This document shows, in pieces, positions 7,741-64,000 of a stretch of 64,000 nt of DNA (positions are counted from its first letter, which is position 1; every line of letters starts with the position of its first letter). The stretch is from Podarcis vaucheri (lineage: Eukaryota): assembly GCA_965113315.1 (NCBI GenBank), contig OZ220370.1; one strand, given 5' to 3'. The notes beneath the pieces were generated by a model. It saw nothing but the letters and a program-made list of their open reading frames with translations, made no database searches and was not told the DNA's origin. Position numbers and translations under genes: made by a program.

Positions 7741-10700
7741 ATCACATTTGCTTAAGTCACATTTCAAATTTCAAGTCAACCAATCTGCATTACCCGTTTT
7801 GTTTCCATGCATCTGCACCCTCCGAACTCCTATTCATGAAACTCTTGTCTATGCATATGCAACTCCTGTCTCAAATGTACACACCTCAGCTTAACTGTGA
7901 AGTAAGTGTAGCATACATTTTTTTGATCAGATAGAAGCTGGTAAGGGCTGATGGGCATTGTATTGAGTGTACTATGTATTGTACATGTACATGTATTGAG
8001 TGTACTATGTTTGCTAGCCGTGGTCTAGAAAGCAATTGAGGAAATGGTTCTCCTTTCTTATTCTGAGAATCATGGCTACTTACATCCTAAAATAGCACCT
8101 CATGCCATTAGCAGTTTGATTTAAACTCAAATTTGCTTATTCCCTTCACTATTCACATCTTGCACTAGGTAGTCCTATATTGATAGACTGTTGCCAGAAT
8201 GCCCACTATCCGGTTGAACAATCAAGGCTTTTTGTGCCAATCATGACATCCATCTTGTGTTGGTAAATTCTGTTCACATTCATTATCCACAAAAGTTATT
8301 TCTTGGGAAGCACTTATGCAGTTCCACCAACTATCAATTATTATTTTCCCCCGTATCAGGTATAAGCTACTGTTTTCCAACTTGGCTCAGAGCAAGGCTT
8401 GAGAGAGATGAAAACTAAAATTTCATATATTCCTAAAATGAATTTATGGCCCATTAGCTGTGGCATACAACTATTTCTATAACTGATTTATTGCAAGAAT
8501 GGCTAAGTCTCCGTTAAACAACTAAATGAATAAACTTCAGTTGCAACTATACTTAATGCTTAATGCTGAAGTAAATACTTTTACATCCTGATATTTCTGC
8601 AGAAATATGTTGAGGATCATGTTAAGAAAGTAACATTTTCCACATACTGCAACAAGGAGTTTCTATAATTTAGTTCATTCTTGAACTAATGCTGCAGGAA
8701 TCAGCACTAAACTTTGATTATACCAGACCACTGGCACCCATCTACATCCCAATTTCTTGCCGTAAAAGGTTAACCACTAAGTGTGAAGTGAAAAATATTA
8801 GCTACTAACAGATAGATATCTATCAACCACATCCTCCTGCAGCACATTTGAAAGGAATTAAAGAATATGGGGTTTGGACAGAGCTGTTTTATTTAGTACA
8901 TTTAAAAAAAAAAAAAATCAGTGAAAGCAGCTTGACCTGTCTATAATGACATAAAACTTAACTTTACTTCAGAATTAATTTAAAACACATACTGTAACAG
9001 GATTAAGATTGCCATAGGAGTGACATCAGAGTTCACATTAGAATCTGATCCATTCTATCATCAGATGTTGACCACCTGACTATTCAGTGACATCTTTCTA
9101 TCTCACATGCAGCAAATAAGCAGATTACACATTATGTACACTGCAATTTCAAGGGAAGCACGTGGAACCCAAACACTAACAGCATCTCCATCAATCCTAT
9201 GATTTTTCAAAATACTTTTATTTAAAGTAAGATTTCCTTTTAATAGTTTATACTCTCTTGCCTGTCTCCAAGTTACTATTACTATCCAACTGTCTATCCA
9301 AGACCATCATTATTCTCTACCCCCAACAGATAAACAAAAGGAAAACAAGTAGGGACAAGGGTAAGTAATACATCCCAACACACAAAACATCAAATTCATT
9401 TTAAGGAGATAAAACAGCTCTCGGTGTATTCCTTAGTTACTATATAAGTAATTTTGAAGCAAAGTCCTATCCCGCCTCACAGCAACCAATTTAAAAGTTG
9501 GCTTTTGTGCTAACATTTTGCTTGAAAACTAATATTTATACCCTAACCCTATGCATGCCAAATTGGAAGCTGTAGTGTTCAAGGGAGTTTACCTATGGAA
9601 ATCATATAAAGGGTTATGACTTTGCTTATTTATCAATGAGGGCAAACCACAGCATTTCCAGTTTTGATTAGATACAATCAGTCAGAACCTTTTAATATTT
9701 TGCAAACCTTAAAACGCATGCTAATAACTGTGCATTCACCGTTACTACACAAACCTGCAGTGGTCTGTGTATTAGTATTTAACAACCAGTCTGCAGTGCT
9801 GAGCAGAGTCATGTCACCTAAAGGAAAATTGCAAAGAAAATGAAAAAGCTAGTACCTTTTCCACACATGTCCCAAAAGAATACGTACAAAAATGTACAGA
9901 AGTTTTCCATTTCTTTTTAAAATTGCTAACTAATTAATTAAAGGGCAGTGCTTCAGGCAGTGTTCCTGCAGTCTACAATCTCTAAAATATAACCTTGATT
10001 CAACATCCAGACTAATTTTTGTACTCCTTTTTATTTTTCCTCATTTCCTCATGCACCCACTATCCCCTGCTTTGGGGGATACCTTGCCTGATAAAGACTT
10101 CTGGGGAAATCACAATTTCATAACATATTGGTTGGTCCTATTAAAGGAGTTCTTTTTCTCCTTACCAGTATACCACTTTTCTCTTTACTTGGAGCCATCA
10201 CATTAAAACTTAACTTCGATGTGTTTATCAACAGGAAAAGTTTTCTGGATTTTGTTAAGATAAAACAGTATGCTTACATTCCAATTTTAAAATCAGAAGT
10301 CAGTGGTGTATGTGCACACAAAAAAAGATAAACAGCACAGTCCTCTGCATGTCTGGAATCAAGTCTCTGTGTTTAAAGATCTTTATTCACAGGTAAGTAT
10401 GCTATGACTACATCCTCAATCAGATGTCTTTATCCAAAAGGCAGTGGTCAGTCATTAATATTGACTAAGGTTGCCATCCTAAAGATACAAATTTGCATTA
10501 TTTTAATTTAGGGAAAGGGGACAAAAATGGTCTATTTGACAAAATACAATGCAGCTCCATTAGATTTAGAGGGAATGGAGGCTAAAAGTATAATCTGATA
10601 ACCCAAATAGTCTTCATTTAGAACTCAGACCAAAAAAAATGTTTTGGGTAAAGGGCATGGGAATGGTGGGTAAATGGATAATTCATTTGATAGATGTTTC

Positions 10701-11050: not shown

Positions 11051-11335
<285 letters not shown>

Positions 11336-12728: not shown

Positions 12729-12778
12729 CTGCAAATGGATGAAACAGCAACATCTGAACTGGTTTGGGATTTTTGCAC
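12729..12778 (-). CDS. EYA1: EYA1 50-nt exon, open in two frames: VQKSQTSSDVAVSSICR (in frame with MEMQ) and CKNPKPVQ-MLLFHPFA (ATG at 12753)
   Basis: Acceptor ccctggtttgcag|GTGC and donor GCAG|gtaagg. MLLFHPFA resembles the recalled MLLFPQVA start of the short EYA1 isoform. The other frame resembles EYA4 VKKTCTESDVSQSQNSR. Confidence 0.9.
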
Positions 12779-14606
12779 CTGCAAACCAGGGACACAAATA
12801 GAAGCCTCTGTTATTCTACGTTCATGTCAGGTCTTAATCTAACTAAACAAAGAAATCTTCCTGAGGATGGTAATGCTGTCTTTTAACCAAAAGAGAAGGA
12901 GGGGGTTACTGCTGCAGTGAAAGACATATTGTCTTTAAATTGAAGCCTCAACTGTTGTTTCCTCCAGCAGGTCTATCCCCCCCTCCCTTGCCATGTCATG
13001 GGGAAGGCAGCCAAATGACGGGATAGTGATTCATCACTGGCCTATGACAGCTGCACACTGGATTTCCCCTCCCCCAATCAACATGCAAAGCAGTCTTGCT
13101 AAGGTAGTTTAGGAAGAGGTGCCTGGGTAAGGTAGCTATTAACAGAGAAAATATATCTAGCAAAGGGAAGAAGCTCCCTAATGCTTTCCCCCCAGCATCC
13201 TCTGAAGATCTTTCAGTTTTTGTTATCACTGGCTGAAACACATCACCCTCCCACTCCTTTAACTCTTGACAGTCTCTTATCCTTATCATGTTAGTTTTCA
13301 TCCCTCCCTCTTCCTTCCACTCTGTCAGTTAAGTTTGCAAGTCCAGTTTCCAGCCAACTTTGAAGACTGCAAACCAACGCTGAAGGATTTAAAGTCAAAT
13401 GAAATGCTATGCTCCTATAATTTGACTGAAAGTTCCCGAATGTTTATGTTTATCTAGGCCAGAAATTCCCCTTCCTCTTATCTGCACCTCTCCCTACAAT
13501 CAAGTTAAACTAAAAAAGAAGAGCATACACTTCAGAATGAATGAATACGAGCAGTACGCAAAAATGTATTTCTAAAATGAACTCCGTGGTCATGAATTGC
13601 TCTTTTGCATTCTCTGTGAATGTACACTCTTTGGACTAGGGTGGGCGAGAGATTCAGTAATGTTTGAAATCTAGACCCTCACTGGTTTAGTGCAGTGCTG
13701 TTGTATGTTATTAAAAATGTGTAAGGTTGTGTTTAAATGAATAGCCTTTGATACCAGTTTCCACACACATACACACACACGCCAAAAAAGCCACTAACAA
13801 CTGCCAGCAGGTGATAAAGCCCAGGTGAAGACTGGCTGCTGGCTTGAAAGCACAAACAAAACTTCCCCAGCAAGGATATACATTGTCTAAATGTCTGAAT
13901 TCAGAATTCCACCCAACCTGAACTGACATCTCTTACATGATCACAGAACAAAGACAAGCAAGATGAGGCATTTTAAGTGCCATAAAAGTCATCCAGGAAA
14001 ATCTCACTTGTGTGCCTCTAGTTTTTGTTATTTTTAATCACAGACAGAATTACTACTTTAGCAGGAGTACACCACTCGTATAAGCAGCCAGACAACATAT
14101 AATGTTACACACAATAGCAAAAAGCATGTACTAACACAGATAGGAAAACTGTAACTCTCCCCCCACCAAAGGTATTTAAAATGCTGCATAGTGTGCTTTT
14201 TAATAGACCATAGCAAACCAAATCAAACTGGAGTATGAAATGTGTATTTGCAACAGCTAAGGCATTTTTTAAAAAGGAAAATACAAAGGACCCAAGTGTA
14301 AGATGGAAACTTTTTACTCTTAACCCTAGACACTGCGGTGGAATGGCTTCAGGATATGTTCTCTCCTTGTACTTCTGTACACCTTTAATAAATTATAGGA
14401 GGGAACGATGCATACTTTACAGTTATCTCTTATTAACAATATGGAGGGCCATTTAAATACAATAATTTTAATTGAACTTCTAGTAATATGTATTAATGTT
14501 TTGTATATTATTTTGCTGATGTTTTAGAATATACCGTAATTTGTCAGTTACAGACAACAAAAATTGTTCTGAAAATATTCTATTACCTCTGTCTTTAAAT
14601 AACTAC

Positions 14607-15596: not shown

Positions 15597-15928
15597 NNNN
15601 NNNNNNNNNNNNNNNNNNNNNNNNNNNNNNNNNNNNNNNNNNNNNNNNNNNNNNNNNNNNNNNNNNNNNNNNNNNNNNNNNNNNNNNNNNNNNNNNNNNN
15701 NNNNNNNNNNNNNNNNNNNNNNNNNNNNNNNNNNNNNNNNNNNNNNNNNNNNNNNNNNNNNNNNNNNNNNNNNNNNNNNNNNNNNNNNNNNNNNNNNNNN
15801 NNNNNNNNNNNNNNNNNNNNNNNNNNNNNNNNNNNNNNNNNNNNNNNNNNNNNNNNNNNNNNNNNNNNNNNNNNNNNNNNNNNNNNNNNNNNNNNNNNNN
15901 NNNNNNNNNNNNNNNNNNNNNNNNNNNN
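15597..15928. other. Assembly gap
   Basis: Run of N. Confidence 1.
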
Positions 15929-19161: not shown

Positions 19162-19520
19162 TGCTTCTGAGGCACCATCACCACCAAACCATTTATAGCT
19201 TCGGAGAGGAGGCACGGGAAAAGCCAGATCCGCACCTTCCGAGCGAGAGAGAGCATAATTAGCTTTCCTCAGCCGAGAGCCTTGGGGGATATGGGGGGGG
19301 GCGGATTTAAGCCCCTCTGAACGGGGCAGTTTCTTTTAAGTGAGGTTTCTTACGAGAAGCCCGAAGCGGACGACAAACCGCGGGATCCAGCCGGGAGAAG
19401 CTTCATAAGGAAGGGGACGATCCAGTCCACTCTTTACAATAATAATAATAATATCACGCAACATTCACGTCTGAACTCGACTTGGGCGCGCGTAGCAGAT
19501 TCGTCCTCTGCTGCGTAAGG
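17930..19520. promoter_or_regulatory. EYA1: CpG island / EYA1 proximal promoter
   Basis: Dense CpG and GC content against an AT-rich, CpG-poor background. Minus-strand TATAAAT at 19197-19191 lies about 29 nt before an Inr-like TCA (19170-19168). Octamer ATGCAAAT at 19030-19037 and ETS-like CGGAAGTG at ~18561. Confidence 0.8.
18061..19168 (-). other. EYA1: EYA1 proximal first exon (5' leader); the 5' boundary is approximate
   Basis: Strong donor TTCACT|gtaagt at 18061/18060 inside a CpG island. Blocks such as AGGACAAGAGAATAGCTGTGGTTTGC and GCCACTTCCGACTTTAAGCCTTCC resemble the recalled mammalian EYA1 5'UTR. Confidence 0.75.
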
Positions 19521-22500
19521 AAAGGGGCAAAAATATCCACATAAAAAGTCAGTTCAGAAATATTTAACCTACACTAAACCCTGCCCTGTGCCAACATCAA
19601 GCAATCTGACACGATAACCACAAACCTTTCAACAGTTCATAATGTGCAGATACAAATGATGGTGGGCAAAATGAATCATTTAAACACACTTCGACTTGGA
19701 TTTCATTTTTAGAGCAATTGCACCTCATCCTTATTCATACTTGGTGGTGCACAGTGTCTTTTTACATTAATTGTGTTTTTATCTGTCCTTTGTGTACATA
19801 AAAACTCAGGCTAGGAAAGAATCTAGTGGGAATATTTTGGGTAACTGATGTCTTTTTAAAAGAATGATATTTTAATACAATTACCGTTCTTCGAAAAATC
19901 GAACTACACATCACCAGAGAAGCAGTGCCTCCCACCCACAATAACAGAGTTATTCTGAGCTATTTAAACCAATCTCACCATAAGATATACATTTATAAAT
20001 AAGCACAGCCTCCTCCACAATACAGTACAAATAATTTTCTCACAAGGAGATAAACACTGAATTGTATACATAGCTTACTTATACAAGTTCAAATGCCCTA
20101 ACTAAAACTGGTTTCCGACTCACATTCATAATTTTGTCTCAGAGTCTGTTATCATATATTGAGTATAGCCTTACCTTCCATTAACAAACTTTGTGATTGA
20201 AAACAACTCTCATAAATAGAAAATACCTTCTGGCTGCAATGTCCAGCTGATACACATTCTGAAGAAAATCTATCAATAAAACTTTCCACCAAGCAAAAAA
20301 GTTGTGCCTAACAGTCTTAAGCTGATACACCAAGGGTCTCTATTTGCTTAGCGCTGGCAAAGAAAAAATAAAAAAATCATGGGATAGACACCTACCATAT
20401 ATGGAAGGTTAAGGTCAAAATCCACATATTTCTATTGGATCTGTTCATGGAGCCAGTATAAACAGAGATGCTTGCCTTCTTTATATCGCTTAAACGTCAT
20501 ACTCAAAGTGTTCTTTATAATGGTTCATTAAACTGCACTAGAAATAAATTTATTTGCAATATTTTAATTTTATTAGGCAAGATTTTACTAAAATCAAATC
20601 CTTATATTTACTATGACACAAGGAATAGCCATTGCTCTGGGCTTTATTTTCATTCTAAGCAATCTGTTAAAAGAATATGTTATTGATGTTTATCAGCATA
20701 AATTTGTTTCTCCAGCACACTGTTAAAATGAGAACATTAGAAAAGTTAGTACACATTGTATGTAGATAACTATTAAACCTTGCTTTCTTCCCCAGAAACA
20801 CACAACTGCTGGAAATAATTTTGCAAATATGCAAAGAATAAAAAAGTGAGGTAATGTACCAAACCTGATATATTTCTACTATACAAATACAATACTAACC
20901 CAGTCTCCCCCCCCCAAAAAAATACAGTTTTATTAACTACATTAAGGCTGCAAGCCTACATACACTTACATGGGAGTAAGTTTTACTGAACTCAGTGGGG
21001 CTTACTTCCGAGTAGTCATGTATCAAATTGCTCTTTCAGAAGTTTTAGAATAGATACTAAAGCAATTGCTTTCCATGGTTAAAAATTTGTACTGAAATCA
21101 TTTGAAGGTTACACAATGAATTCAGTCTGAATGTATCCAATGTCAAAATCATTTATACTCAAATATGTATTTACAGTGGTTGACAGACAAGTAGCTAATT
21201 TTATGTACAAGATAGATATATTCAAGTCTGGAAAGACTAATCTACCTTGGATTTGCAAGAGATTCATTGGTGAACATTTTAATAATCCTTTAGTAAAGCA
21301 TTCATTCATACTTCATACAGTGAGTGGAGATATAAAGGATCATAGCTTTGTAGGTCTGTGTTAAACTCCTGATCTGACTATTTGTATATAATTATTTGAC
21401 AAAATGCCAGTAGAATCTGAAAAAAATACCTGTTTCAGCATAAGCATTCCTTTTTAAATGTAATTTACAAACCACAGATTTGCTATTGGAGGCCAATTTT
21501 TCAGCAAGGGTAAAATAAGCTCTGTTTGATTTCACTATGAGCCTTATTTATATTATCTGAAGCGCCCTTCTTGACTTTATATGAGCAGATTCCTGGGTTC
21601 TGCATAGGGAAATGTGTTAATTTTCATACATTGTTTCTGCTCTTAATGTCACCAAGGTCCAATCAACCCTCTCCAATTCACAGTTCTTGCACACAACTTA
21701 TCTGGCACTAAATTATATTAATATCAGTAGGACTTAATCCAACACATGCATTTAAGATCAAGGTGCTGGACAATGATCCTGAAACTTTATAGCCTGTGAT
21801 CCCAAGCAAGGACATGCTCTTCTACTAAAATCAATGGAAATTATTTCTTTATATGCCTTTTTAAGCTTGAGAAGTCTGAAAAAAGCATTCTAAAATCCCA
21901 CTGACATGCTACATATTATTTATTTGTCTAATAATTTTTCAGACATGTTACTGGAGAAGACTCCTCCTGAGGAGACATAGCTGGGGTTTTGTTTTGTTTT
22001 GTTAAAAAAAATACAAAATACAATAAAGCAATAAAAAAATCAAATGGTGTCAATTTTTTTTAACCACCCTCCAATTCAGAAATTTCCAAGCAGTTCACAA
22101 TAACTCATAAGACATAGTAAAATAACATTAATCAATAAATATAGCAGAGAAAAAGTTTTTTTTAAAATTCAAATCACATGCCAACTGCTGGTTTGAACTA
22201 GAAGTTTTCACCTGACTCTTAAAAATCTACAGGGAAGAACTCTAGCAGGCTCCTCTAGGAAAGGAAAGCATAGAACAGGCCCCACAACCAAGAAGGCCCT
22301 GTTGTATGTCCTCCCCAACAGACACAGAAGTTGGTCCTTTCCTGCAAATCGCAGCAAATGAATTTCGAAAGCCAAAGAGTTTGATATTTAGCAGCATTTT
22401 GCATCACTTGCAAAAGGTGAAACAAAGGCAATACATTTGCTTAAGGCATCTTCAAATTATATCCTGCCATCTCTGAAATCCTTAAAGAGCAATTTACTCC

Positions 22501-38052: not shown

Positions 38053-38192
38053 NNNNNNNNNNNNNNNNNNNNNNNNNNNNNNNNNNNNNNNNNNNNNNNN
38101 NNNNNNNNNNNNNNNNNNNNNNNNNNNNNNNNNNNNNNNNNNNNNNNNNNNNNNNNNNNNNNNNNNNNNNNNNNNNNNNNNNNNNNNNNNNN
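38053..38192. other. Assembly gap
   Basis: Run of N. Confidence 1.
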
Positions 38193-40236: not shown

Positions 40237-40372
40237 NNNNNNNNNNNNNNNNNNNNNNNNNNNNNNNNNNNNNNNNNNNNNNNNNNNNNNNNNNNNNNNN
40301 NNNNNNNNNNNNNNNNNNNNNNNNNNNNNNNNNNNNNNNNNNNNNNNNNNNNNNNNNNNNNNNNNNNNNNNN
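40237..40372. other. Assembly gap
   Basis: Run of N. Confidence 1.
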
Positions 40373-58981: not shown

Positions 58982-59326
58982 GGGACACGGGTGGCGCTGT
59001 GGGTTAAACCACAGAGCCTAGGACTTGCCAATGAGAAGATCAGCGGTTCGAATCCCCACGACAGGGTGAACTCCCGTTGCTCAGTCCCTGCTCCTGCCAA
59101 CCTAGCAGTTCGAAAGCACATCAAAGTGCAAGTAGATAAATAGGTACCGTTCCAGCGGGAAGGTAAACGGCATTTCCATGCGCTGCTCTGGTTCGCCAGA
59201 AGCGGCTTAGTCATGCTGGCCACATGACCTGGAAGCTGGCTCCCTCGGCCAGTAAAGCGAGATGAGCGCCACAACCCCAGAGTCGGCCACGACTGGACCT
59301 AATGGTCAGGGGTCCCTTGACCTTTA
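58982..59326 (+). mobile_element. Sauria SINE
   Basis: Same family as 31522-31872 with a small internal deletion; TSD-like CCTCCCCCCTTT on both sides. Confidence 0.92.
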
Positions 59327-60254
59327 CCTCCCCCCTTTTTAAGACCAGGTTTATGCTGCTTTCACTCTGATTTTCTAGTATTTTACAGAATTCAAAAATA
59401 ATAACAAACAAAAGGAGAGGTGGCTGAGTCCAAATAATACATCACTTGTAGAATGTTCACAGTTATTGTTGCAGAGTAGCCTTTGTCTCACCATACTGAA
59501 GACAGACATGGCTGTAATCACTTAATATGAACAGGCATTTCTGAATACAACAGAAGCAAGTAAGCAAGTGAAAGATAAACTAAAACAGATAACTCAGGAA
59601 GAACTCTTAGATTTCTGTTCCTAGGTATATTAACTATTTAGTAGCTGGTTTCCCCACAGTAAAGTGGGTATTAATTAAAGGCTATTGCCTATTCCAGCAA
59701 TAGTATCCAAGGGCTGTTTATCCTAGACAGCCTTTCCCAAATAATATTTGAGGTTGCGGTGGTCTAAGAAACAGGGATCACTATTCCCATGGGAGATTTT
59801 TTTTCTAAAAAAGACCAGTTTTAAGAGCTAAATCTGCAACTAAAGGCTCCCTCTATACTCTGTTGCACAGTATAGCTTTTGATTTAGATTGACAAGACTG
59901 TAGAGCATTTTGTGGAGGGAAATTAGATCTTTTTACAAAATAATTCCTACAAATTTTGTCTTTGTGGATTTTTGTACAAATTCAGTCCAGTATTTCATAT
60001 TTGGCAATTAATTCCTCCCTTTGGGGAATTTTGCATGATATTGTGATTATTGCATAAAGAGTCATTTAGTCTACAGACAATATGCAGTATACAAGAACAA
60101 ATTATTGATTTTTCTTTCAGTTATCTTTTCTTAAATTCCACCAAATGTAGAAAATTCTACTTTCTGATGTTTACACCAAAAGCACTCTGTTTTGTGGTTT
60201 CTTGTTTTTCCAATTTGATCCTTTTAATCTGCCTTAAGAGTACCATTCCATGTA

Positions 60255-60365
60255 TCCGATGAAGAGATCTCTGGCCCATGGAAGCTTATGAATAAATTTG
60301 TTTACCTTTAAGGTGTCAGAAGATTTTCTTATATTGCTGCAAGAAAACAATACCGCTGCTCTTCA
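60255..60365 (+). mobile_element. Penelope-like element terminal remnant
   Basis: tgaaga...cccatggaagcttatgaataaatttgtt...taaggtg resembles recalled reptile Penelope ends; degenerate. Confidence 0.4.
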
Positions 60366-60750
60366 AAAGTTTGTCCCTTGTTCAGCACAGGGCCTAACAC
60401 TGCTTCAAATACACCTAAAACAAAGAACATGAAAGTCTCAGAAAAGCTTATTAACAAAACAAATTAGACTGTTTTAAGGTTAAAATATTGGCTGACTCAT
60501 TGGCAGTAGCACCGTGATTTTTCCTGTGACATTTACACTAAGCATAAAGCAATAACTTTAAAATTAAATACATTTGCAGTTCAGCTTTGATGTAGCCTTT
60601 AACCTCTCATGGTATAATAAATCCATAGCTCCAGATCATTAAGAGCGGGACAGTGCTTTAAGGAGTTTCCAAGCACTCAGTTATGACAAAAATAATTACC
60701 GCTTTAATGGCAATAATTCTTTCCTCAGGGGTGACATGCTGTTTACTTAC

Positions 60751-60846
60751 AGTCTATCCATTTATCCCCGGAGGGTCTTCCATTGAAGATATCTTCTTCC
60801 AAATTATATGTTGGCTGTAAAGCTACAGTGCGCTTCAAACTAGCAC
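60751..60846 (-). other. EYA1: Distal EYA1 exon (96 nt: 63 nt leader plus 33 nt ATG...ACT); ancestral N-terminal exon with an in-frame TAG
   Basis: Acceptor ctctcttctacag|GTGC and donor GACT|gtaagta. The ATG at 60783 lies exactly 33 nt from a phase-0 donor and reads MEDPPGING*T. This matches the architecture of the EYA4 (MEDSQDLNEQS) and EYA3 (MEEEQDLPEQP) first coding exons. Confidence 0.8.
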
Positions 60847-61423
60847 CTGTAGAAGAGAGTAGTGCATAGCTGTATTCATTTGTTGGCATGAAATTAAGAG
60901 CAGATTGTCGTATGTGCAGCTTTCCGTGGAACAACATGTACACACACGTCAGGAGCATTCATCTTCAATGAATTAGACTGATCTTTTAAATAAATATTCT
61001 CGGTGGGTTGGCCATGACAACCAGCATGAGCCCCAACACAGGAAATTATAGCTCTCTTGTTAGTTAGCAGCTGAAGTGAAGAGAGGCAGCCATGAATGGT
61101 TTTTTGTAGCCAATATTTCTGTGCCACTGGGACACAAGAGATGAGGGGCTTTTCTTATTTGGTGCCACGCTCGTTCTTACATTTGCTTCCCACCAGCATC
61201 AGTGACCGTGCCATGTACAAAATGCAACAAAAATGGACCATAAATGTAGACTGAGCTCAGGTTTTAAACATAGGAAAAATCACACCTTTGAGAACATACT
61301 TCAAGCAAAGGAAATTGTTGTACTAATTTGCTAAAGGTTCATATTAGGTCACACTTTTACACATTCAGAAGGAGCCATCTTTGTTAGCCATCATGCAACA
61401 GAACATGGTGTTTGCTGCTATTA

Positions 61424-62103
61424 GGTGATCGCGTGATCCACGCGACGGTCACCTCCAGATTGGATTACGTGGGGCTCTACGTGGGGCTGCCCTTGAGACT
61501 GACCCAGAAACTCCAGCGGGTGCAGAATGCTGTAGCGAGACTCCTTACAAGGTCTTTGCTGCGAGATCACATTCACCCGGTGCTACACCAGCTGCACTGG
61601 CTCCCGGTGGAGTACAGGATCAGATTTAAGGTGCTGGTTTTAACCTTTAAAGCCCTATACGGCCTAGGACCCTCGTACCTACGGGACCGCCTCTCCTGGT
61701 ATGCCCCACAGAGAAACTTACGGTCTTCAAATAAAAACATCTTGAAGGTCCCAGGCCACAGAGAAGTTAGGCTGGCCTCAACTAGAGCCAGGGCTTTTTC
61801 GGCTGTGGCTCCGATCTGGTGGAACACTCTGTCACAAGAGACCAGGGCCCTGCGGGACTTGACATCTTTCCGCAGGGCCTGCAAGACAGAGCTGTTCCAC
61901 CAGGCCTTTGGCCAGGGCACAGCCTGACTCCCTCCCTCGGCAATCTTCGCGGAGCTCTGGCCCAATGGTTGCCAGTGGCCTGAATTAATTAATTTTACAA
62001 TGAATGATTTTAGAGTGTTGTTTATGTTATACTTTTATACTGTTTTATTGTTGTTAGCCGCCCTGAGCCCGGCTTCGGCTGGGGAGGGCGGGATATAAAT
62101 AAA

Positions 62104-62155
<52 letters not shown>
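61424..62155 (+). mobile_element. L2-clade LINE 3' fragment
   Basis: ORF2 C-terminus (TSRLDY, KLQRVQNAVARLLT, LHWLPVEYRIRFKVL, RAFS), terminal stem-loop and (TTA)n tail. Confidence 0.92.
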
Positions 62156-62530
62156 TCAACTAGTGAGGCAATTATCAAAATGTACGTTTTGTAAGGATTT
62201 CAATAAAGAACAGTGTTTGAATGCTGTCGTTAGACATCCCATTGCCTTTTGAACGTATTTGGCAGAGTGTGGCTACTCTGTACTCTAGTAGTTCTGAAGC
62301 TTGTATGGGAAATAAGGTTATTGGGTTTAGGAGTAGAAGAAGTCAACAAGCTTACTTTCCTCTGTTTGCATCAGTCAGAATCTTTGGCACAAATAAATGA
62401 CTCCCTCTAGTAATGCAAGAGTATGTGCACTTTGTTATTCATTTCAGAAACTACTTGGAAGGGTTAACTGAATACCTGATTTATCAGTTTTCCCACTGCC
62501 ATGCCTTGTTTGGTTGGTGGCTTGTTTGGA

Positions 62531-62535
62531 TAATG

Positions 62536-62583
<48 letters not shown>
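62531..62583. repeat. (ATA)n microsatellite
   Basis: Seen directly in the sequence. Confidence 0.95.
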
Positions 62584-62587
<4 letters not shown>

Positions 62588-63506
62588 TAAACTCACAGAG
62601 CAAGCCTAATTCTGGTTAAGAATAATAGAATTCTGTGACCCCTTGGGACTCCTAGGGTTGTCTCGTCCAGCCCCCCTACAATGCAGGAATCTCAATTAAA
62701 GCATCCATGAAAGAGGGCCATCCAATCTCCGTTTAAAAACCTCCAAGGAAGGAGAGTCCACAACCTCCTAAGGGAGTGTACTGTTTAGCACATATTTTGT
62801 AAGAAAATGTATTCAGAATATTGTTGCTAAATAAATACTAAAATAACAGATTTTGCACAAATATCTTCATATATTTTTTTTATGAAGATCAACATAGAAA
62901 GGAGAAATAATGTACCTATGAATGAACACATTTGAAAGTAACATAGCCCCGAAATGAACTGACCATCCCTACTGTTAAGGTTGTGGTCTCTGCCTTACAC
63001 GCATTAGCAAATATCCCTAGTAATAATCTGTTGGATATCGAAGAGAAAAGGGGACAGAAGTGGGTGGGAGATGAAATATGTAAAAGGAAACACAAACCTC
63101 TTAGAATAGCTCAATGTAATGTCTTTTTACATCTTCTCTGCAATGGGATATGGTCACTATTTTGAGCACTGATATGGCTGGCTCCACTGAGTACAAAAAT
63201 AAAAACACAGGATAAAAAACAAAACGATTTATATTCTATCAAGGGACAGGAGGAAAATGCAACCATATTTGGGAAGAAATTAACATTATTTCCGGCTTGT
63301 TATGCTTTCCCATCAATGAGCCATTGCAGACAGGAAGTGGCAATGACTCAAGTAACTAAAGGTGCTACTTAGTTATTTTCAGTGCATGGAAAGTCATTCT
63401 AGACTGGTGGCAGCTGAGAAAGTAGCACTGGCAAACTTGTCCAATCCAGGGTTTATCTCCTCTCTGAATGCATGCCAAGTATCTAGGGCCCCAGGTGCAC
63501 TATATA

Positions 63507-63746
63507 CAGTGATACCTCTAGTTACAACGTAATTTATTCTGGAGGTCCGTTCTTAGCCTGAAACTGTTCTTAACTAGAGGAGTGATTTTGCTAATGGGGC
63601 CTCTTGCTGCCACTGTGCCAACAGCACACGATTTCCATTCTCATCCTGGGGCAAAGTTCTCAACTCGAGGTAACTCTTCCAGGTTAGCAGAATTTGTAAC
63701 CTGAAGCGTTTGTAACCTGAGGCTTTTGTAACTCGGGGTACCACTG
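63507..63746. mobile_element. Tc1/mariner MITE (more diverged copy)
   Basis: CAGTGATACCTC...GGGGTACCACTG with TA TSD; opposite orientation to 43701-43926. Confidence 0.85.
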
Positions 63747-63759
63747 TATGATACACTTA

Positions 63760-63985
63760 CAGTGGTACCTCGGGTTAAGAACTTAAATTGTTCTGGAAGT
63801 CTGTTCTTAACCTGAAACTGTTCTTAACCTGAAGCACCACTTTAGCTAATGGGGCCCTCCAGTGCCACTGCACCACCGGAGCATGATTTCTGTTCTCATT
63901 CTGAAGCAAAGTTCTTAACTTGAGGTACTATTTCTGGGTTAGCGGAGTCTGTAACCTGAAGCGTCTGTAACCCGAGGTACCACTG
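63760..63985. mobile_element. Tc1/mariner MITE
   Basis: CAGTGGTACCTCGGGTTA...TAACCCGAGGTACCACTG with TA TSD. Confidence 0.9.
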
Positions 63986-64000
63986 TAATGCAATTTCATA

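What the first reader, a model, noticed from the sequence alone, without database searches (positions are those of the whole stretch)
60751..60846. Distal ancestral EYA1 start exon carries a stop codon (MEDPPGING*T) but keeps strong splice sites
Seen: a 96-nt exon with good acceptor and donor, 48 kb upstream of the 50-nt exon, with its ATG exactly 11 codons from a phase-0 donor. The ORF track does not show this frame. Spliced onward it would read [34 protein letters not shown], colinear with EYA4 [35 protein letters not shown] (recalled). Codon 10 is TAG (60756-60754) where EYA3 and EYA4 have Gln. Inference: a CAG>TAG change removed the 29-aa N-extended EYA1 isoform in this lineage or individual and turned the old start into a 9-codon uORF.
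Basis: partly seen in the sequence, partly recalled or inferred. Interest (0 to 1): 0.85.

Follow-up and report, generated by a model that had tools for sequence, protein, structure and literature searches.

The report
Stop codon in lizard EYA1 start exon
In wall lizards, an old alternative start exon of the developmental gene EYA1, still coding in mammals, birds and the coelacanth, carries a real, fixed stop at its tenth codon, so this protein start is lost; what the intact-looking exon does now is untested.

Summary
On the minus strand, 60846..60751 is a 96-nt exon with a good acceptor and a GTAAGT donor. Its ATG (60783-60781) lies 11 codons before a phase-0 donor, and codon 10 is TAG (60756-60754).

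It is the orthologue of a conserved EYA1 alternative first coding exon. 144 fetched gene models from mammals, birds and coelacanth begin with the same 11-codon peptide (MEDPxGINGxS/T), followed by the 50-nt exon peptide and MEMQDL. Codon 10 is Gln in mammals and coelacanth and Lys in birds.

The stop is not an assembly error. Contigs from an independent sample of the same species label, and from a second species label about 1% diverged, show no difference across the exon.

None of 41 squamate models (17 species) starts with MEDP, so the loss may be older than Podarcis. The sampling is biased, so this is only a hint.

- Podarcis models still carry the exon-B peptide, from another in-frame ATG at 19464.
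- The uORF role is inferred. The one RNA run laid had no reads on the exon, and there was no control that EYA1 is expressed there.

This is a lineage-specific loss of one isoform start, of moderate interest. Two other first-reader notes on this window touch the same exons.

The parts
60751..60846 (-). Exon A: 96-nt orthologue of the EYA1 'MEDP' alternative first coding exon. It has 63 nt of leader, then an ATG, 9 sense codons, TAG and ACT.
60781..60783 (-). ATG1, the ancestral start codon. Context is TCAATGG: T at -3 and G at +4.
60754..60756 (-). TAG at codon 10. The same codon is Gln in mammals and coelacanth and Lys in birds.
   Evidence: Unchanged in read contigs X3 and X9.
60745..60750 (-). 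Phase-0 donor GTAAGT of exon A.
60847..60870 (-). Acceptor of exon A: a pyrimidine-rich tract ending CAG. It implies a further upstream exon, which was not found in 60847-64000.
   Evidence: Mammal models with ORFs running into this exon from upstream.
60759..60761 (-). ATG2, out of frame. By hand across the junctions, it reads MDR.. into frame 1 of exon B. The T of the TAG is the silent third base of its GAT codon.
12729..12778 (-). Exon B: 50 nt. Frame 0 gives VQKSQTSSDVAVSSIC plus AG. Frame 1 has its own ATG (MLLFHPFA).
   Evidence: Bird isoforms beginning MLLFPQAA then VKTEPM.
11119..11246 (-). Exon C: 128 nt, holding the canonical start MEMQDL (ATG 11242-11240).
   Evidence: It is 100% identical to squamate EYA1 models.
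19354..19464 (-). Coding part of a proximal, CpG-rich first exon. It has an in-frame ATG and 37 codons, and its donor is CTC|GTAAGA. Podarcis gene models use it as the start of their N-extended isoforms.

Best explanation
Exon 60846..60751 is the wall-lizard orthologue of a deeply conserved alternative first coding exon of EYA1. In other vertebrates this exon supplies an 11-residue start (MEDPxGINGxS/T). That start is spliced in phase 0 to the 50-nt exon and then to the MEMQDL exon, adding 29 residues (28 plus the Ser before MEMQDL) to the protein.

In this lizard lineage a single substitution, most likely CAG to TAG, made codon 10 a stop. The change is fixed in at least two closely related species labels. 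The MEDP-started protein therefore cannot be made.

Nothing else in the exon is damaged. The ATG, the other eight conserved residues, the length, the acceptor and the donor are all intact.

Inferred, not shown: if the distal promoter still produces transcripts with this exon, they carry a 9-codon upstream ORF that ends 3 nt before the exon junction and 57 nt before the canonical ATG. The canonical protein could then be made from them only by leaky scanning or reinitiation. That would turn an alternative-N-terminus transcript into a translationally damped transcript for the standard protein.
For: Sequence anatomy.

Orthology:
- 144 fetched models start with the 11-codon motif followed by the exon-B peptide and MEMQDL.
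- Coelacanth isoform X1 reads ..INGQT at codons 7-11, and the lizard reads ING*T.
- The leader part of the exon is also alike when translated..IIQKKSSMEDP in primates and carnivores against ..IIWKKISSMEDP in the lizard.

Reality and fixation: contigs of X3 (same species label, other study) and X9 (other species label) have 16 and 24 listed substitutions in the surrounding 1.9 kb, but none between 60431 and 60865.

Consistent annotation: none of 41 squamate EYA1 models from 17 species starts with MEDP. Podarcis and Pogona N-extended models use other upstream exons, and snake X1 models start at or just before MEMQDL.
Against: - There is no RNA evidence that the exon is still used. The only raw RNA run laid (X23, about 12% read) has zero depth from 59405 to 61348, and the 'RNA?' run X20 matched only about 35 nt by chance.
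- That RNA run had no control exon, so this neither supports nor refutes expression.
- The absence of MEDP among squamate models is biased by top-120 lists and by 90% clustering.
- Birds, the nearer relatives, have Lys at codon 10, so AAG>TAG is not excluded.
- Reinitiation over 57 nt, past an out-of-frame ATG in exon B, may be inefficient. The uORF picture is a model only.
Confidence: 0.72

Rival explanations
1. Dead relic. The distal promoter or exon A is no longer used in lizards, the stop has no consequence, and the exon is simply decaying or is kept for a non-mRNA reason such as an enhancer.
For: - Zero RNA depth on the exon in X23.
- No squamate or turtle model with this start.
- Lizard models place their upstream starts in other exons.
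Against: - There is only one lesion. The ATG, eight of eight constant residues, the exon length, the phase, the acceptor and a perfect GTAAGT donor are all kept.
- There are no listed substitutions in 435 nt around the exon in either compared sample, which together represent two species labels. This is a weak test: roughly P = 0.05-0.07 as a post-hoc longest gap, by my own calculation.
- The RNA run lacked an expression control.
Confidence: 0.22
2. Assembly or sequencing error, or a private allele of the sequenced individual.
For: None was found.
Against: Independent contigs from another study of the same species label (X3), and from a second species label (X9), carry the same letters across the exon while differing at many flanking sites.
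Confidence: 0.02
3. The stop is recoded, by translational readthrough or by A-to-I editing of UAG to UIG (read as Trp), so the N-extended protein is still made.
For: Exon A and its donor lie in a predicted local RNA structure more stable than shuffles (z = -2.8). One hairpin encloses codons 4-11 and the 5' splice site.
Against: - By my own knowledge, no known readthrough context follows the stop (TAG A).
- The A of the TAG sits in an internal loop of the predicted fold, not in a long duplex.
- There are no RNA reads to show editing.
- Gene models for Podarcis do not use this start.
Confidence: 0.03
4. Chance ORF: not an EYA1 exon at all.
For: Exon-like acceptor/donor pairs are common in 64 kb.
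Against: - Eight fixed residues match.
- The 11-codon length, phase-0 donor, position and strand all match the annotated exon of 144 models.
- My rough estimate of a chance match in the window is about 5e-6.
Confidence: 0.01

Closest known systems
N-extended EYA1 isoform annotated in mammals, birds and coelacanth (for example dog P0047, wallaby P0083, sandgrouse P0091, Latimeria X1 P0398)
   Same: - The exon order is the same: an 11-codon start exon, a 50-nt exon, then the MEMQDL exon.
- The donor phase is the same.
- Residues M-E-D-P-x-G-I-N-G are the same.
- Codon 11 is Thr, as in the coelacanth.
   Different: - Codon 10 is a stop in the lizard, so the start is unusable.
- No squamate model fetched carries it.
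EYA4-type N-terminus (MEDxQDLNExS + VKKT...; the EYA4-like fragment P0043, named EYA4-like from my own knowledge)
   Same: The three-exon architecture is the same, and so are MED..(D/G)(L/I)N at the start. This shows the layout predates the EYA1/EYA4 split.
   Different: It is a paralogue, not the orthologue. In EYA4 this is the main start, by my own knowledge. In EYA1 it is one of several alternative 5' ends.
Podarcis N-extended EYA1 gene models starting in the proximal exon (P. muralis X12/X15/X17, P. raffonei X1/X2/X12...)
   Same: They also read through exon B in frame 0 into MEMQDL.
   Different: Their start is a lineage-specific in-frame ATG in a CpG-rich proximal exon (window 19464..19354), unrelated in sequence to the MEDP exon. 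It may be an annotation choice of the longest ORF rather than a proven protein.
uORF control with an overlapping second uORF (ATF4/GCN4 type; named from general knowledge)
   Same: A very short first uORF is followed by an out-of-frame ATG (in exon B). By hand from the per-exon frames, that ATG's ORF runs past the main start.
   Different: - The spacings are tiny: 28 nt to the exon-B ATG and 57 nt to the main ATG.
- No stress or translation data exist.
- The arrangement arose by a nonsense change in a former coding start.

Membership tests
EYA1 'MEDP' alternative first coding exon | Lies upstream of the 50-nt exon and the MEMQDL exon of EYA1, on the same strand. | tested here: met
   Exon C is 100% identical to squamate EYA1 models.
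EYA1 'MEDP' alternative first coding exon | The ATG is exactly 11 codons before a phase-0 GT donor. | tested here: met
   All 144 orthologous N-termini have 11 residues before the exon-B peptide.
EYA1 'MEDP' alternative first coding exon | Conserved residues M-E-D-P-x-G-I-N-G. | tested here: met
   Eight of eight constant positions match.
EYA1 'MEDP' alternative first coding exon | The reading frame is open from the ATG through the donor. | tested here: not met
   TAG at codon 10, confirmed in independent read contigs. It is therefore the orthologue, but not a functional member as a coding start.
EYA1 'MEDP' alternative first coding exon | Spliced to the 50-nt exon in mRNA. | tested here: inconclusive
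X23 RNA reads give zero depth on the exon, with no expression control. X20 was a chance match.
Upstream ORF in a 5' leader | An AUG upstream of the main AUG, with an in-frame stop before the main ORF. | tested here: met
   ATG 60783 and TAG 60756. Counted by hand from the per-exon sequences, the stop is 57 nt before the main ATG.
Upstream ORF in a 5' leader | Present in a mature transcript and occupied by ribosomes. | not testable with these tools
   This needs RNA-seq or Ribo-seq of EYA1-expressing lizard tissue.
Decayed pseudo-exon | Several disabling lesions: lost splice sites, a lost ATG or frameshifts. | tested here: not met
   There is a single lesion only.

The most novel reading that the evidence does not exclude
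The stop is old, perhaps squamate-wide, as hinted by the absence of any MEDP-started model in 17 squamate species. On this reading the exon has been kept intact by selection because it was exapted from a protein start into a translational control element. That element would be a 9-codon uORF working with the out-of-frame ATG of the dual-frame 50-nt exon to set how much canonical EYA1 is made from distal-promoter transcripts.
Probability: 0.15. Interest if true: 0.55.

Novelty: new member of a known kind. Interest (0 to 1): 0.3.

Why it matters
EYA1 is a dosage-sensitive developmental co-activator and phosphatase for ear, kidney and branchial arch development (general knowledge). Its 29-residue N-terminal extension is conserved from coelacanth to mammals and shared with EYA4, and my literature searches here found no function described for it.

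A lineage in which that start is cleanly knocked out by one substitution, while the exon otherwise stays intact, is a natural experiment. There are two possible readings:
- The extension is dispensable in lizards.
- The exon has another role, as leader or uORF, that keeps it.

The finding is also a practical warning for annotation. Lizard gene models fill the gap with lineage-specific in-frame ATGs that may not be real starts.

Tried and rejected
- Run X20, listed as 'RNA?' with a 0.06 word share, looked as if it might hold the exon. It matched only 33-37 nt at 60291-60327 with 3 mismatches, which is chance.
- RNA run X23 covered only the highly repeated element at 59000-59400 and nothing on the exon. 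It had no control for EYA1 expression, so it gives no verdict.
No other squamate exon-A DNA could therefore be read, and the age of the stop beyond the two species labels is unknown.
- The exon-A peptide (9 residues before the stop, 1 after) is too short for any protein search. It was not searched, and it was not read through the stop.
- The joined A+B+C model was neither built nor searched. Only exon C was searched, by reference. Readings across junctions were made by hand from the per-exon frames.
- Three literature searches found nothing on this isoform or on lizard EYA1.
- The 435-556 nt stretch without substitutions around the exon is not significant as a post-hoc longest gap (about 0.05-0.07), so it is not used as evidence of constraint.
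- No human contig was fetched or compared. Human EYA1 proteins appeared among the hits, and only their N-terminal motif was tallied.

Full report
**What is there**

On the minus strand, the window holds the 5' part of EYA1.
- Exon C (11246..11119, 128 nt) encodes the canonical start, [13 protein letters not shown]... It is 100% identical over 41-42 residues to squamate EYA1 models.
- Exon B (12778..12729, 50 nt) reads VQKSQTSSDVAVSSIC plus two bases in frame 0.
- The finding, exon A, is 60846..60751 (96 nt), 47,972 nt upstream of exon B.
- Exon A's acceptor is a pyrimidine-rich tract ending CAG|G. Its donor is ACT|GTAAGT.
- Its ATG is at 60783-60781. The frame reads MEDPPGING, then TAG (60756-60754), then ACT, then the phase-0 donor.
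- No GT lies between the ATG and the TAG, so no alternative donor skips the stop.
- No in-frame ATG follows before the canonical one.

**Is the stop real?**

I laid four runs on 59000-61400.
- X3 has the same species label as the window but comes from another study. Its single contig spans 59306-61269 and has 16 listed substitutions against the window.
- X9 has another species label. Its contig spans 60369-61183, and the label has 24 listed substitutions across the region.
- Neither has any listed difference between 60431 and 60865.

The TAG is therefore not an assembly slip or a private allele. It is shared by at least two closely related taxa. However, the window is identical to neither P. 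muralis nor P. raffonei in the exons compared.

**What is it?**

I searched exon C alone, by reference, against protein representatives. I then used full-length hits to pull vertebrate EYA1 models and cluster members.

Among 418 fetched proteins, 144 begin with an 11-residue peptide of the form MEDPxGINGxS/T. This is followed by the exon-B peptide and MEMQDL. The forms by group are:

| Group | First 11 residues |
|---|---|
| Placental mammals | MEDPRGINGQS |
| Marsupials | MEDPQGMNGQS |
| Birds | MEDPQGINGKS or MEDPEGINGKS |
| Coelacanth | MDESQCINGQT |
| This lizard | MEDPPGING*T |

- All eight positions that are constant in mammals and birds match the lizard.
- The 11-codon length and the phase match.
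- Thr at codon 11 matches the coelacanth.
- The leader part of the exon, when translated, also resembles the mammalian in-frame upstream sequence.
- An EYA4-like fragment (P0043) has the same three-part layout, so the architecture predates the EYA1/EYA4 split.

Exon A is thus the orthologue of a deeply conserved alternative first coding exon. Codon 10 is Gln in mammals and coelacanth, Lys in birds, and occasionally Pro or Leu. Gln (CAG) to TAG is the most economical history, but AAG to TAG cannot be excluded.

**How old is the loss?**

The indirect evidence is as follows.
- None of 41 squamate EYA1 models from 17 species starts with MEDP. The species are two Podarcis, Pogona, Tiliqua, Lerista, Paroedura, Sphaerodactylus, Rhineura, Varanus and eight snakes.
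- None of 15 turtle models starts with MEDP either.
- By contrast, most bird and mammal models ranked by the exon-B-plus-exon-C region do start with it.
- In one search the query ranked proteins by exon B plus exon C plus the squamate-type alternative exon. Only Podarcis and Pogona appeared above the birds, and both use other upstream exons.

This hints at an older, perhaps squamate-wide, loss. But top-120 lists and 90% clustering hide many isoforms, so it stays a hypothesis.

1. NCBI models of P. muralis and P. raffonei still contain the exon-B peptide.
   - They start at an in-frame ATG in another exon, which I located at window 19464..19354. It is CpG-rich and its donor is CTC|GTAAGA.
   - So 'the N-extended isoform is removed' holds only for the MEDP start. 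Whether the 19464 ATG is a real start or a longest-ORF artefact is unknown.
2. The uORF role is an inference.
   - Read by hand from the per-exon frames, a transcript A-B-C would have a 9-codon ORF ending 3 nt before the A/B junction.
   - An out-of-frame ATG in exon B lies 28 nt after that stop. Its ORF runs past the canonical ATG.
   - The canonical ATG lies 57 nt after the stop.
   - This would damp production of canonical EYA1 and could not extend the protein.
   - No RNA evidence was obtained. X23, raw RNA reads with about 12% of the run read, has zero depth from 59405 to 61348. Only one stretch could be laid, so there is no control that EYA1 is expressed in that sample. X20 was a chance 35-nt match.

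**Rivals**

- A dead, unused exon remains possible (0.22). Against it, there is only one lesion, and every other feature is intact after roughly 300 million years of conservation.
- Recoding by readthrough or editing is unlikely (0.03). The predicted local fold is more stable than shuffles (z = -2.8), but it does not put the TAG in a long duplex.
- Assembly error and chance ORF are rejected.

**Verdict**

This is a real, fixed nonsense change in the orthologue of a conserved alternative EYA1 start exon in wall lizards. It is a lineage-specific loss of one protein N-terminus. It is a further example of a known kind of event, and of moderate interest because the lost N-terminus is ancient and I found no function described for it. 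The regulatory (uORF) reading and the age of the loss are the open points.

Noticed in passing
window 19354-19464 (-), and upstream to about 19530: A CpG-rich proximal exon holds an in-frame ATG and 37 codons (MLRDIIII...GLL), with donor CTC|GTAAGA. NCBI models of P. muralis and P. raffonei use it as the start of their longest EYA1 isoforms. The run of Ile codons comes from an ATT repeat and differs in length between the three Podarcis sequences.
   Followed up: partly
window 20175-20213 (-): The start peptide of the Ensembl P. muralis model P0262 (MRVVFNHKVCQWK, then exon B) is present here. The window has a stop where that model has Gln (..HKVC*WK).
   Followed up: no
window 12953-12994 (-): About 175 nt upstream of exon B, an ATG-led stretch (MAREGGIDLLEETT) matches the start exon of a Sphaerodactylus townsendi model (P0001, MCRRGIDLLEETA then exon B). 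It is conserved between gecko and lacertid, but in the window it is followed by a weak GTTGAG donor.
   Followed up: partly
window 12729-12778 (-): Exon B is dual-frame. Frame 1 has its own ATG (MLLFHPFA).
   Followed up: partly
window 59000-59330: A very highly repeated element. Summed contig depth is in the millions in both DNA runs, and the RNA run has hundreds to over a thousand reads on both strands, with many internal joints. It is probably an abundant SINE-like repeat.
   Followed up: no
window 60700-60775 (-): A predicted RNA hairpin encloses codons 4-11 of exon A and the 5' splice site. The 201-nt region folds with z = -2.8 against shuffles.
   Followed up: partly
proteins P0111, P0175, P0179, P0190 (turtles): Turtle N-extended EYA1 models start with another peptide (MKAQWCQGGSWGGSPDDKM, then exon B). 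No turtle model fetched starts with MEDP, so the MEDP start may also be unused or lost in turtles.
   Followed up: no
window 9741-9818 (-): An alternative coding exon (GDMTLLSTADWLLNTNTQTTAGLCSN) matches P. muralis isoform X8 exactly over these residues.
   Followed up: no
window 15597-15928, 38053-38192, 40237-40372: Three runs of N (608 bases in all) lie inside the 48-kb intron. They were left untouched.
   Followed up: no
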